From assembly GCA_964057225.1 (NCBI GenBank), contig OZ059899.1, forward strand, positions 13,826,001 through 13,890,000: a stretch of 64,000 bases of DNA. The letters run 5' to 3'. The notes beneath the pieces are model-generated. The model saw nothing but the letters and a program-made list of their open reading frames with translations, did not search any database and was not told the origin of the DNA. Shown here in pieces: positions 7,211 through 63,669 of the stretch (position 1 is the first letter of the stretch; the number at the start of each line of letters is the position of its first letter). The DNA is from Auanema rhodensis (lineage: Eukaryota > Animalia > Nematoda). A program made the position numbers and the translations under genes.

Positions 7211-14196
<6,986 letters not shown>

Positions 14197-14319
14197 ACAT
14201 TTATTGTTACTTTTTGTTGTTTTATCATAAAATTTTCATATTATTTGTTATGATTGTTACGATTCAAAATACGTCTTGAAGTATCAAAGTTGGTATAACT
14301 GAACACAGCAATAAACATA

Positions 14320-54296: not shown

Positions 54297-54805
54297 TTGG
54301 TGTGTCAATAAATACGTGGCCATAGTAAGTCATGTGGAAAAAATTTAAAAAAATGTTAAAAGCGAAAAGAATTTATTTCCAAAAATATTCTCCCCCGTTT
54401 CAATCACTTTCTTCCATCTCTTCTCTAAATTTCTTATCCCATTCCTGAAAAATAACTGAGATTTGGGCTCGAAAAAAGTTTCAATAAAAGTTTCAACTTC
54501 CTCCATAGTTTTGAAGCTTCCCGCTCTCAAACGATGTTCCATTGACCTGAACAGATGGTAATCTGTTAAGGCAAGGTCTGGAGAATAAGGGGGATGCTTC
54601 AAATCTTCCCAATCCAGCTCCTGGACCGTTTGTTGTGCCTTCGCACAACAGTGAGGTCGCGCGTTGTCGTGGAACAACGTCACGCGCCTGATGCGGTTTA
54701 AATATATTCTTATTTTGTAATTCTTTTAAAAAAAAATTAAAATTTTGTAAAAGTTAAGTATTTTTTTAAATTCTCGCGGTGGCCACGTTTTTATTGACAC
54801 ACCTA
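54297..54805 (-). mobile_element. Internally deleted mariner (D,D34D) element, ~510 bp
   Basis: Inverted repeats GGTGTGTCAATAAA(T/A)ACGTGGCCA at both ends; minus ORF 54345-54683 has LFHDNARPH...HPPYSPDLALTDYHLF with exactly 34 residues between the last two Asp; N-terminal two-thirds of the transposase missing. Confidence 0.92.
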
Positions 54806-58999: not shown

Positions 59000-59139
59000 A
59001 TGAGTAATCTTCAAGATATTGTAAATATTTGTGTTATTGTCATATTGGTTGTTGGATTTTTTATCGGAACATTTGGTAATTCAATGATACTTCTCTGTAC
59101 TATACGTAATCCAGATCTTCGTGGAAAGCCAGGTATGAT

Positions 59140-59187
<48 letters not shown>

Positions 59188-60269
59188 TCCCTCTTTCTCT
59201 CTCTATTCATCTTCTTCATCTTCAGGAATATTGCTGGCTGTTACTGCTTTTGCTCACATAATCTGCTTATCCTCAGAGTTGATTCATGCTTATACGATCT
59301 TGATTGATACAGGCATTGAACGAATTTTGTGTTTCAAATTGCTTTTCATCTATCTCAATGCCATTCAATTCCAAGCTGCTATGTCCTTAATCATGGTTTT
59401 AGATTTACTTCTAGCCATTGTATTTCCTATATGGTATTTCCTAATTATGCTGTTTATGCTAATTATTCTTCTAAAACTTGAAACTCTTATAGGTATAAGT
59501 CATGTCAAACAAAACTTTATTTGATTATAATGCTTACACCACCTTCTCTATATGCTTTATCATTTCAATATCCAAGTATTATTACTTTAACTGATGATAC
59601 CATACCACGATGTAATACTATGCTAGGTACATGCCATAAACTTATTACAAACTTAGCCAGCTTAATCATTTCAGTTATTGCTGATCCTCATCTAGCTACA
59701 ATTCGTTTTAATTGCAATTTGATTGTTAATGTTCTCACAATCGTCAGCTATATCTTATCTCTAATATTCTTCTACAAAGCTTGTAAGCCACAGATTATGC
59801 TTCATACTCAATAACCACAAGTAAAAACTTAATTTAGGCATTAATCGTGACCAAATTCGGCCAGTGTTGAAACGCGTAGGAGTTACAGCTGTATTCTTCG
59901 TTTGTACATGGTTTCTGGCATCTGGAGGTGCCAATATCATATCCCGATTCAACGTGTCTAGTTCAGTTCGCAATGCCATGCATTCCAGTTTGGTGGGAGT
60001 TTAATTCATATAACTAACTTTAAAAATTAAATTACTAAATGCAAATGGATAACCAAATTATTTTTAATATTTTCAAGAATTATTTGCAGGTTATATTCGG
60101 AGTTATGACTTATAGTCAGAACTTTTATATTTTACTTTGGAGAGCACGTCGATATCGTCAGACAGCCTTTGAAATGATTTTTGTATTCAAAAAATTTCAA
60201 AAAACCCGAACTGTATCAATACGTCCATTTACATCTCATACTAATTCAAATTTTACAACAAGAACATAA
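59000..60269 (+). CDS. Serpentine chemoreceptor GPCR, Srsx-like (copy B)
   Basis: Same motifs and exon layout as copy A; TYSQNFYILLWRARRYR. Confidence 0.85.
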
Positions 60270-60316
60270 TATAATTGAAATATTATAAGAATAGTTAAGT
60301 TAACTATATGTATATA

Positions 60317-61757: not shown

Positions 61758-62574
61758 GAGATGCTGGAATAGATGCAACAAGGTTGGTGTCGATCTTCAA
61801 GCCGAAAATGGCAAAAACGGAATGTGTTGAGTGGGCAGCAATTGACGACGAGCTTGCGATAACGAGCTTAAATGCTCCAAAGCAATAACGTGATTTCTAA
61901 AGTTAGTAGAAGAAGAAGGAAAAAAAGGAGGAAAAAAGTGATATAGAGAGATGGTTCAATAGAGAGGGTGAGGAATAGAGAGGGAAAAGGAGAGAGAAAG
62001 AGAGAGAAATGTGTGTTGGGGGTGGGGGAATGGAGTAAAGTAGGAGGATAAAGCTAAAATGAAATGAAGAAGCTTGATGATATTACTAAGAGATCAAACT
62101 ATTCCAATTGTAAGCTTGTCATTCAAAAACATTTGAAATACTATTTTTAATTAGAAAACAGTTCAACAACTTCGTTTATTTGAAATCAAAATGTCAGAAG
62201 TTCAAATTATCTCCGATGGACCGATGGAGAACTTCTCTGATTTTTGATGTACTTCTTCGAAGAATTATTTCCGCTTTTTACGGCAATTGATGCATTTTTT
62301 CTTGAATTCTATCTGTTGACATGACATTGAGCCTGAACGAGAAACGAAACAAAGAACGTCTACTCGGACAAGATACGACGAATGAGAGATGAAGCTCTTG
62401 ATGTTGAAGCATCAGTCTATCTACCAACATCAGTTTTCAAGGTTAACAGATTTTCGAGACGTTTTTTCTCATTCGCTTCGTCTAATCAAGGACATCGTCA
62501 TGTCCATATAAGAGGAATATCTAACTTGTACTTGTCATTTCGTCCAGCTACTATCATCAACTGAAGCTGAAGCT

Positions 62575-63408
62575 ATGGTATCTGTTGGAATTGCTTCAAC
62601 AGCTTCATTGCTTACAACATTAGTGGCTTCAGCCTTTATAACCCTTATTATGAATCAGATGAGCGAATTAGATGTGTTAATTGAATTGAATGAATTCCAG
62701 GTTCGTTAAAATGTTTTGGAAAAACAACAACAACAACAACCTAAATAGCAATTTCTTGTTTTCTTTTTTTTCCAGATTTATACAACAGTTATGGGTAATG
62801 AAGATGATGTTAACGATTATGATGATGATTGGATAAAGAAGTTGAAAACAAAGTTTGTTCATATAAGCAGTGAAATTAGTCAGCCTACGTTGGAAATGCT
62901 TATGGGACATAGACAACGTGGACGCAAAGCTTCGTGTCAAGTTTCTCTTTCAAAAAGTAACTTTGAATCTTGGTCTGAAGGCTGTGTGTTCAATGGACAA
63001 CAGCATTGCCCTCCAATGAGACAGGATCTTCTTCTTAATGGCTGTGATGAGCGATTGAGAGTATCTACTGCGGTGGTTGGTGATGCTATTGGGTGTGTAC
63101 ATCTGATTAAAGAAAATGAGCAAAAACGTTATTTTAGAGTAGCAGATGACTATTCTGAAGATCGTGTACGACAAACGAAATCCCTATTTAGCTGTAACTA
63201 TAACGATGAAACACGTGATACAGATGTAACACCAGAATTAATGGGTCATTCTCAGCTGAATGCAACTGCCGGATGTAGAGGATTGCAAGCAAAATCTGCT
63301 ATTCGATGCTTCCGAAGGGCAATAGGTTCAGCTGTATTCGACAGGTTACGAAAGGAAATGCTCAGAAGACAAGTTGGTAATAGTACAGAAAATTCTGGAC
63401 AAGACTAA
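62575..63408 (+). CDS. Cuticle-collagen-derived protein with degenerated Gly-X-Y domain (diverged gene or pseudogene)
   Basis: Exon 62575-62700 MVSVGIASTASLLTTLVASAFITLIMNQMSELDVLIELNEFQ resembles Col_cuticle_N; exon 62776-63408 has a basic site RQRGRK, C..HCPP and a 3-codon register of Gly or one-step-from-Gly codons. An extra upstream exon 62382-62441 is possible. Confidence 0.65.
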
Positions 63409-63669
63409 TTGCATATGACGTACGTATCTGCTCGTTTTGAACAAATCTCAATTTCAAGTTTGAATTGAAAACTCTTGAAAGGCATCGGAAAAGTAGCGAA
63501 TTGGACGAAGATAGAAAGCAGCAACAGCCGCAGTATCAGCAGCAGTTACATCATGATGATGTAACTAACTGAGATGAAAACTAAAGAATTTCGGTATTTC
63601 TGATATAAATATAAAAATCTTTATTACATGATATATATATTCTTAATCTAATAAATTCATTTCACTTAA

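What the first reader, a model, noticed from the sequence alone, without database searches (positions are those of the whole stretch)
62575..63450. A ghost collagen: Gly-X-Y register survives in the codons though most glycines are gone
Layout is that of a cuticle collagen (N-terminal TM helix, ELNEFQIY, basic cleavage site, Cys cluster, CPP). From 63190 every third codon reads AGC,TAT,GAA,GAT,GTA,GAA,GGT,CAG,GCA,GGA,GGA,GCA: 10 of 12 are Gly or one base from Gly; again TGC,AGG,GGT,GTA,AGG from 63307, ending ENS-GQD. Only 9 Gly remain in ~130 residues, yet 210 codons stay open. A triple helix is impossible, so either selection kept the frame while the helix was dismantled (new non-helical protein) or this is an unusually stop-free pseudogene; the TAA falls where the terminal Cys motif is expected.
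Basis: partly seen in the sequence, partly recalled or inferred. Interest (0 to 1): 0.75.

Follow-up and report, generated by a model that had tools for sequence, protein, structure and literature searches.

The report
Cuticle collagen gene that lost its helix
A roundworm gene keeps the promoter, first exon, intron position and pro-region of a skin (cuticle) collagen. Its collagen helix has worn away to a faint three-codon rhythm while the reading frame stayed open, so a structural repeat protein has probably turned into a different protein rather than died.

Summary
A two-exon gene (62575-62700, 62776-63408; 252 codons) is built like one subfamily of this genome's own cuticle collagens.

Shared features:
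- a TATA box of collagen type
- a membrane-anchor head whose only Pfam hit is a sub-threshold Col_cuticle_N
- a phase-0 intron directly after the ...EF(Q/K/R) motif, as in that subfamily
- in order, a W motif, a basic cluster and a Cys...C...GQQ.CPP knot

After CPP there is no collagen: no Gly-X-Y run in the window or in the 26 kb downstream, and no Pfam hit. Exon 2 has no relative among 1.84 billion proteins.

Crude periodicity tests were not significant. A codon model built from 219 real Gly-X-Y blocks of this genome found a local signal of 15.3 bits at 63202-63345. Permutation P was 0.0005-0.001, and 0 of 164 control ORF chunks reached it.

In simulated neutral decay to this level of glycine loss, 128 collagen codons almost never stayed open (1 of 2,000 runs at 0.5 or more substitutions per site). 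Selection on the frame is therefore more likely than a lucky pseudogene.

Expression and dN/dS could not be tested. Two first-stage readers noted this same stretch; no follow-up existed.

The parts
62505..62515 (+). TATA-like core promoter element (CATATAAGAGG), 68 nt before the ATG
   Evidence: Read. Real collagen genes of this genome carry (T/C)ATATAAG 25-75 nt before their ATG, e.g. L014 and L027.
62575..62700 (+). Exon 1 (42 codons): hydrophobic signal-anchor (residues about 3-26) followed by a degenerate Col_cuticle_N head ending ELNEFQ
   Evidence: The only Pfam hit is Col_cuticle_N at 12.7 bits, E 0.14, below the cut-off of 23.5. tblastn against 141 kb of own collagen loci hits only true heads, end to end (L112 E 0.007, L087 E 0.011). 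Hydropathy is 1.6-1.8. Shuffle controls are weak.
62701..62775 (+). Intron: 75 nt, gt...ttttttttccag, phase 0, with an in-frame TAA
   Evidence: Read. It has the same position and phase as the intron after ...EF(Q/K/R) in L087, L112, L076, L094 and L114, and after the corresponding DMK in L118.
62776..63015 (+). Exon 2, pro-region remnant: DDDW motif (62821-62832), basic cluster HRQRGRK (62908-62928), Cys-knot remnant C54...C70...C78-P-P (62935-63015)
   Evidence: Collinear with the subfamily pattern ..AW..(F/I)GRNKR..QCNCG.Q..CP.G found in 16 distinct genes. L087 and L031 read CGQQPS(N/H)CPPG where this gene reads NGQQHCPP. The HMM score taken alone gives p about 0.06.
63016..63201 (+). Exon 2, first 62 codons after CPP: no recognisable origin, three Cys (90, 107, 140)
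   Evidence: No periodic signal, no Pfam hit, no relatives.
63202..63345 (+). Ghost of a Gly-X-Y block: 16 triplets whose first codons are GGA/GGT or mostly one step from GGA (GAA, GTA, GCA), with Gly kept in 4
   Evidence: 15.3 bits, permutation P 0.0005-0.001, 0 of 164 control chunks reach it. Present in the true frame only. Robust to model settings, and model-free P 0.008. Fisher 6e-4.
63346..63408 (+). C-terminal 20 codons (part of a predicted basic helix) and the TAA stop
   Evidence: The structure model has low confidence, so the helix is only a prediction.
63650..63655 (+). AATAAA, a possible polyadenylation signal about 245 nt after the stop
   Evidence: Read. Not tested.

Best explanation
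This is a single-copy derivative of a cuticle collagen gene of the 'GRNKR...QCNCG.Q..CP.G' subfamily of this rhabditid nematode.

What it has kept: the collagen-type core promoter, the membrane-anchor head exon, the subfamily's phase-0 intron, and a worn version of the pro-region (W motif, basic cluster, first cysteine knot up to CPP).

What it has lost: the triple-helix-coding part has been overwritten by point substitutions at roughly 0.5-1 per site. GC fell from about 57-61% to 40%. In-register glycine fell to 14% over the tail and 25% in the best-preserved 16 triplets (63202-63345).

The 252-codon frame, both splice sites and an even number (8) of cysteines survived this. I therefore infer that stop codons were selected against, and that the product is a non-helical protein.

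Inferred mechanism: the protein enters the secretory pathway through its N-terminal anchor. It exposes a disulphide-bonded, non-collagen ectodomain of about 200 residues at or near the epidermal surface or cuticle. It may no longer be released by the BLI-4/furin-type cut, because the RxxR site is degenerate.

Shown here: ancestry, anatomy, the periodic ghost, and that neutral retention of the open frame is very unlikely. Inferred only: expression, topology, disulphides and function.
For: - The only Pfam hit of exon 1 is Col_cuticle_N.
- tblastn of exon 1 against the genome's own collagen loci hits only real heads, end to end, finishing on the same EF(Q/K/R).
- The intron position and phase are identical to L087, L112, L076, L094, L114 and L118.
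- The pro-region is collinear with 16 subfamily genes, and GQQ.CPP is shared with L087 and L031.
- The TATA element resembles those of real collagens.
- No Gly-X-Y exon lies anywhere in the window or in the 26 kb downstream, so this is not a mis-modelled collagen.
- The ghost periodicity scores 15.3-17.1 bits with P of 0.001 or less, 0 of 164 controls reach it, and it is in the true frame only. GGA-neighbour codons are 10/16 in register against 4/32 off register.
- The neutral-decay simulation reproduces the observed Gly fraction, near-Gly fraction (0.64 against 0.65) and GC (0.41 against 0.405) at t of about 1. It left 128 codons open in 0 of 400 runs at t 0.5, 0.75, 1 and 1.5, and in 1 of 400 at t 2.
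- The codon-usage frame score is +0.19 bits per codon, 7th of 54 long open frames in the window.
Against: - Each head and pro-region similarity is weak when taken alone. Pfam scores 12.7 bits against a cut-off of 23.5. Shuffles that preserve the anchor/polar split give p 0.035 and family-wise P 0.16. The pro-region HMM gives p 0.06.
- The ghost covers only 48 of 130 tail codons and emerged after several cruder tests had failed.
- The frame score is below the lower quartile of true exons (0.28).
- AlphaFold2 without an alignment gives no confident fold (pLDDT 33).
- There is no evidence of transcription.
- No homologue was found in other genera. Close congeners appear not to be visible to these searches: a normal collagen of this genome finds nothing above 60% identity. 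Conservation is therefore unknown.
Confidence: 0.5

Rival explanations
1. A dead collagen gene: an unprocessed pseudogene decaying neutrally, whose frame has stayed open by luck.
For: - Every collagen feature is degraded: head below the Pfam cut-off, no strict RxxR, the C-x-C of the knot split by 14 residues, the helix gone.
- GC and the near-Gly fraction match neutral decay at t of about 1.
- The codon-usage score is modest.
- No fold and no relatives.
I did not check it.
Against: - At t of 0.5 or more, 128 collagen codons stayed open in 1 of 2,000 simulations. GGA is one step from TGA.
- A sequence of this composition would be expected to carry about 13 stops in 210 codons.
- GT/AG, the polypyrimidine tract and the TATA box are all intact.
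- The number of cysteines is even.
Confidence: 0.25
2. A chimeric or partly new gene. Only the 5' part (promoter, exon 1, pro-region up to CPP) comes from a collagen. The tail came from other DNA after a deletion or rearrangement, and the three-codon rhythm at 63202-63345 reflects chance or some other structural periodicity of small residues.
For: - The first 62 codons after CPP show no ghost.
- Global periodicity is weak (P 0.03-0.16).
- Exon 2 has no similarity to any collagen locus by tblastn.
- AlphaFold2 predicts a helix over residues 172-204, which overlaps the end of the signal.
Against: - The local signal is strict period 3 over 16 triplets. It is enriched specifically for GGA and its one-step neighbours, which is the collagen Gly codon (88% GGA in real blocks). 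It strengthens when the codon tables come from the nearest subfamily.
- Coiled-coil myosin rod pieces among the controls do not reach the score.
- A captured non-coding tail would stay open for 130 codons with a probability of about 2e-4. This is my estimate from base composition.
Confidence: 0.17
3. No gene at all: a chance open frame next to a hydrophobic ORF that only resembles a collagen head.
For: Genome-wide, on the order of ten random open frames of 210 or more codons are expected at this composition (my estimate). The individual similarity scores are weak.
Against: Several features coincide: the only Pfam hit is the predicted family, the intron sits at the homologous codon and phase, the W / basic / Cys / CPP motifs are in the right order, the TATA box is of collagen type, and there is a periodic ghost.
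Confidence: 0.05

Closest known systems
Cuticle collagens of this genome's 'FGRNKR...QCNCG.Q..CP.G' subfamily, nearest L087 (G000:C4:13436869) and L031 (G000:C4:13438803)
   Same: TATA element; membrane-anchor head; for L087, exon 1 ending ...EEFQ with a phase-0 intron; W motif; basic cluster; Cys knot ending GQQ..CPP.
   Different: - The paralogues continue CPPG into about 10 Gly-X-Y triplets, then a GC(I/V)xCP knot, then a long interrupted helix and a C-terminal knot. Here none of these survives.
- Head identity is only about 33%.
- There are extra insertions: about 12 residues before the W and 14 residues inside the knot.
- RNKR has become HRQRGRK.
C. elegans cuticle collagens as defined by Teuscher et al. 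2019 (PMC7852208) and reviewed in PMC11304992
   Same: Predicted type II membrane topology, a basic site shortly after the anchor, and a cysteine knot before the first helix.
   Different: It lacks the defining N-pro-helix (about 10 triplets), the main domain of 37-43 triplets and the C-terminal knot. Col_cuticle_N scores below the Pfam cut-off.
Atypical C. elegans collagens COL-55, ROL-8 and COL-135 (PMC7852208)
   Same: [quoted passage not shown]
   Different: Those proteins still consist of Gly-X-Y repeats. This gene has none.
Collagen pseudogenes such as C. elegans col-182 in N2 (PMC11304992, PMC7341120)
   Same: A collagen gene that has lost its collagen function.
   Different: According to those papers, col-182 was disabled by an insertion in the lab strain. 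Here the frame, splice sites and promoter are intact despite deep sequence erosion.

Membership tests
Nematode cuticle collagen | N-terminal membrane anchor or signal peptide | tested here: met
   The 19-residue Kyte-Doolittle mean is 1.6-1.8 over residues 1-25.
Nematode cuticle collagen | Col_cuticle_N (PF01484) at or above the gathering score | tested here: not met
   Exon 1 alone scores 12.7 bits against the cut-off of 23.5 and was the only hit. It did not appear among the 94 genome hits at E of 0.001 or better. tblastn to the genome's own heads gives E 0.007-0.011.
Nematode cuticle collagen | RxxR furin/BLI-4 site after the anchor | tested here: not met
   A basic cluster HRQRGRK sits at the homologous place, but no Arg-x-x-Arg is present. 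The paralogues have RNKR or RTAR.
Nematode cuticle collagen | Cysteine knot preceding the first Gly-X-Y block | tested here: inconclusive
   C54...C70...C78-P-P is collinear with QCNCG.Q..CP.G, but the C-x-C is split by a 14-residue insertion and no Gly follows CPP.
Nematode cuticle collagen | Gly-X-Y domains (N-pro-helix of about 10 triplets and a main domain of 37-43 triplets; PF01391) | tested here: not met
   There is no run of 4 or more Gly-X-Y in any frame of the window, and only two four-triplet Gly-rich runs (not collagen-like) in the 26 kb downstream. No Pfam Collagen hit at E up to 10. Only a codon-level ghost of 16 triplets with 4 Gly remains.
Nematode cuticle collagen | C-terminal cysteine knot | tested here: not met
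   The paralogues end ...C.CP... or ...CPKYC.... This gene has C167 and C178 inside the ghost, and no such motif.
Subfamily 'EF(Q/K/R)|intron ... GRNKR..QCNCG' of this genome | Phase-0 intron directly after the EF(Q/K/R) of the head | tested here: met
   This gene reads ELNEFQ|gt. L087 reads LEEFQ|gt, L112 INQFK|gt, L076 MNEFR|gt and L094 MEEFK|gt.
Pseudogene | Disabling lesions: stops, frameshifts, lost splice sites or lost promoter | tested here: not met
   252 codons are open, GT...AG is intact and the TATA box is present. Loss of expression was not testable.

The most novel reading that the evidence does not exclude
A cuticle collagen gene was converted, under continuous selection for an open frame, into a non-helical membrane or secreted protein. 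It still carries the collagen head and the first cysteine knot. It might act on collagen biogenesis itself, for example by pairing with chains of its parent subfamily during chain selection or processing as a cap or decoy. That would be a case of protein birth by erosion of a repeat domain.
Probability: 0.15. Interest if true: 0.7.

Novelty: new variant of a known kind. Interest (0 to 1): 0.5.

Why it matters
Cuticle collagens form one of the largest gene families in nematodes. They are thought either to persist as helices or to die as pseudogenes. Here a gene has an intact promoter, head, intron and frame, but its helix has been substituted almost beyond recognition. It would show a third fate: a structural repeat reused as raw material for a different protein.

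The case also has a datable trace. GGA-neighbour codons persist in register, so the order of events can be tested by comparing congeners. If the gene turns out to be a pseudogene, it is only a curiosity: an unusually long-lived open frame.

Tried and rejected
**A mis-modelled real collagen with helix exons further on.** Rejected. No Gly-X-Y run of 4 or more triplets exists in any frame of the whole window. The 26 kb downstream holds only two four-triplet Gly-rich runs that are not collagen-like.

**A frameshifted collagen.** Rejected. The ghost model gives nothing in the other five frames (P 0.08-0.9), and 9-base power is absent overall.

**An astacin-like protease.** The ESM Atlas listed only astacin clusters, but at 0.87-0.88 with low recognition. 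Pfam shows no astacin hit at E up to 10. Rejected as a chance lead.

**Paralogues or relatives of exon 2.** None were found in the own genome, by word search, by phmmer against 1.84 billion representatives, or as an exact ORF on public contigs.

**Structure.** AlphaFold2 on the single sequence gave pLDDT 33, so no fold search was run.

**Crude periodicity tests.** The near-Gly run scan, chi-square by register and 9-base Fourier tests were not significant or only nominal. They lack power, because 49% of codons count as 'near Gly'.

**Head similarity to the 25 strongest collagen heads.** Not significant under shuffles that preserve the anchor/polar partition. The relevant subfamily lay among the weaker Pfam hits.

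**Controls for the 'no relatives' result.** A ProRS exon and a complete collagen of this genome find only relatives at 60% identity or less, in other genera. The orphan status of exon 2 therefore says nothing about congeners.

Full report
**Setting**

The window is G000:C7:13826001-13890000 of a 181-Mb nematode genome. That genome has at least 94 Col_cuticle_N matches. The neighbours are ordinary nematode genes: an Srsx serpentine receptor upstream, and BBS1 downstream on the other strand. A complete collagen of this genome finds its best relatives in Caenorhabditis, Ancylostoma and other Rhabditina at 60% identity or less. The worm is therefore a rhabditid, and its close kin are not visible to the protein searches.

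**Anatomy**
- Exon 1 is 62575-62700, 42 codons. It is a hydrophobic anchor followed by ...SELDVLIELNEFQ.
- A 75-nt phase-0 intron follows (gt...ttttttttccag). It carries an in-frame TAA, so a retained intron would truncate the protein.
- Exon 2 is 62776-63408, 210 codons plus TAA.
- CATATAAGAGG lies 68 nt before the ATG, and no ATG lies in between.
- AATAAA lies about 245 nt after the stop.
- I never searched or folded the joined product.

**Is it built like a collagen?**

Pfam gives exon 1 a single hit, Col_cuticle_N. The score is 12.7 bits (E 0.14), below the cut-off of 23.5. Exon 2 gets nothing, including no Collagen repeat, at E up to 10.

Against the 25 strongest collagen heads of this genome the similarity is weak once the 'anchor then polar' layout is preserved in the shuffles (p 0.035 for an HMM, family-wise P 0.16 for pairwise scores).

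The picture changed when I fetched the weaker Pfam matches.
- tblastn of exon 1 against 141 kb of collagen loci returns real heads as its top hits, aligned from the first to the last residue and ending on the same motif. L112 scores E 0.007 and ends ...INQFK. L087 scores E 0.011, is 33% identical and ends ...LEEFQ.
- In L087, L112, L076, L094 and L114 that motif is followed at once by a phase-0 intron; L118 has the intron at the corresponding point after ...DMK. This gene has the same arrangement.
- Their second exons read ..AW.., about 20 residues, (F/I)GRNKR, a few residues, QCNCG.Q..CP.G, and then Gly-X-Y. Sixteen distinct genes share this pattern.
- This gene is collinear with it: DDDW, then 24 residues, then MLMGHRQRGRKASC, then a 14-residue insertion, then C..NGQQHCPP. 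An HMM of the pro-regions aligns the pieces in the right order. The score alone gives only p of about 0.06.
- L087 and L031, a tandem pair on contig 4, read CGQQPS(N/H)CPPG.
- Real collagens here carry (T/C)ATATAAG 25-75 nt before the ATG.

No single item is strong. Taken together they make descent from this collagen subfamily the only reasonable reading. The items are: the predicted family as the sole Pfam hit, the homologous intron codon and phase, the ordered motifs, and the promoter element.

The basic cluster is degenerate, with no Arg-x-x-Arg. According to PMC11304992 and PMC7852208, RxxR is the usual BLI-4/furin site of cuticle collagens.

**Is there a helix, or a hidden one?**
- No run of four or more Gly-X-Y triplets exists in any frame of the window.
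- The 26 kb downstream holds only two four-triplet Gly-rich runs that are not collagen-like.
- The tail after CPP is 40% GC, against 57-61% for real Gly-X-Y DNA.
- Exon 2 has no paralogue in the genome, no word-sharing relative and no phmmer hit at E of 0.001 or better among 1.84 billion representatives.
- AlphaFold2 without an alignment is uninformative, with pLDDT 33.
- An ESM Atlas lead to astacins (0.88, low recognition) finds no support in Pfam.

**The ghost**

'Gly or one step from Gly' covers 28 codons and 49% of exon 2. Shuffled codons give a run of 10 or more of 12 in most trials, and a run of 11 of 12 (the best in exon 2) in 15%.

I then built a sharper test.
- Codon tables for the G, X and Y positions came from 219 real Gly-X-Y blocks of this genome.
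- They were evolved under an AT-biased HKY model for 0.1 to 2 substitutions per site.
- Each codon was scored against the average of the three positions.
- The score was scanned over registers, times and window sizes, and calibrated by codon permutation.

Results:
- P is 0.0005 for the tail and 0.001 for the whole exon.
- 0 of 164 control chunks of long open frames from the same genome reach it, including myosin coiled-coil pieces. Their maximum is 13.2 and their 99th percentile 9.8.
- Only the true frame shows the signal.
- It is robust to GC and kappa, and rises to 17.1 bits with codon tables from the nearest subfamily alone.
- A model-free contrast of near-Gly codons in register against out of register gives P 0.008.
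- Real collagens use GGA for 88% of glycines. In the window, GGA or a one-step neighbour fills 10 of 16 in-register codons against 4 of 32 others (Fisher 6e-4).
- Simulated ghosts show that the test has about 97% power at t = 1 and 60% at t = 1.5.
- The 62 codons between CPP and 63202 show nothing.

I ran several tests before this one. The permutation covers the scan inside the final test, but not my choice of test.

**Gene or pseudogene?**

I decayed the collagen DNA of L031 and L087 neutrally in silico.
- Reaching the observed in-register glycine (14% over the tail) takes about one substitution per site.
- At that point the simulated GC (0.41) and near-Gly fraction (0.64) match the observed values (0.405 and 0.65).
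- 128 codons stayed open in 0 of 400 runs at t 0.5, 0.75, 1 and 1.5, in 1 of 400 at t 2, and in 4.5% of runs at t 0.25.
- GGA is one step from TGA.

The intact frame, splice sites and TATA box therefore argue that stops were removed by selection. The codon-usage frame score is +0.19 bits per codon. That is 7th of 54 long open frames in the window and is similar to the neighbouring receptor gene. It lies below the lower quartile of true myosin exons.

I put a functional, non-helical product at about 0.5-0.6, a lucky pseudogene at about 0.25, and a tail of other origin at about 0.15-0.2.

**Comparison with the known**

By the definition of Teuscher et al. (PMC7852208), a cuticle collagen has an N-pro-helix of about 10 triplets, a main domain of 37-43 triplets and flanking cysteine knots. 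By that definition this gene is not a collagen. It is a collagen derivative. Atypical C. elegans collagens (COL-55, ROL-8, COL-135) still consist of triplets. col-182 in N2 is a pseudogene that arose in the lab strain (PMC11304992).

I found no description of a cuticle collagen gene that kept its frame while losing its helix. These were full-text searches of an incomplete library.

**Verdict**

This is a new variant of a known kind and of moderate interest. It remains open until expression and comparison with congeners are done.

Noticed in passing
window 10553-11848: A tandem repeat of 264 nt x 5 copies, 95% alike. On the + strand its consensus appears to encode the ...QG..VR.LK... motif of WHEP-TRS linker repeats. 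It lies just upstream of ProRS exons (12275-14230), so this is probably a Glu-Pro tRNA synthetase gene with unusually homogeneous linker repeats. The WHEP reading is from memory and was not scanned.
   Followed up: partly
window 59000-60300 (+): An Srsx-type serpentine chemoreceptor gene (Pfam 7TM_GPCR_Srsx, E 3e-16). A (CT)n microsatellite sits inside what appears to be its first intron and reads through as SLSLSL in the raw ORF.
   Followed up: partly
window 54345-54683 (-): A fragment of a mariner/DDE_3-type transposase (E 2e-4, below the Pfam cut-off).
   Followed up: partly
G000:C5:15313560-15329144: Five HSP70 copies with identical scores, about 3.2 kb apart; the first is in the opposite orientation.
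   Followed up: no
L032:5479-5667 (-), i.e. about 2 kb past the window's end: A BBS1 (BBSome subunit 1) exon on the opposite strand. It is the next recognisable gene downstream of the finding.
   Followed up: no
G000:C4:13436869-13453274: A cluster of collagens of the GRNKR..QCNCGQQ..CPPG type (L087, L031, L109). One head match (L109) carries an in-frame TAA. These are the nearest relatives of the finding, although they lie on another chromosome.
   Followed up: partly
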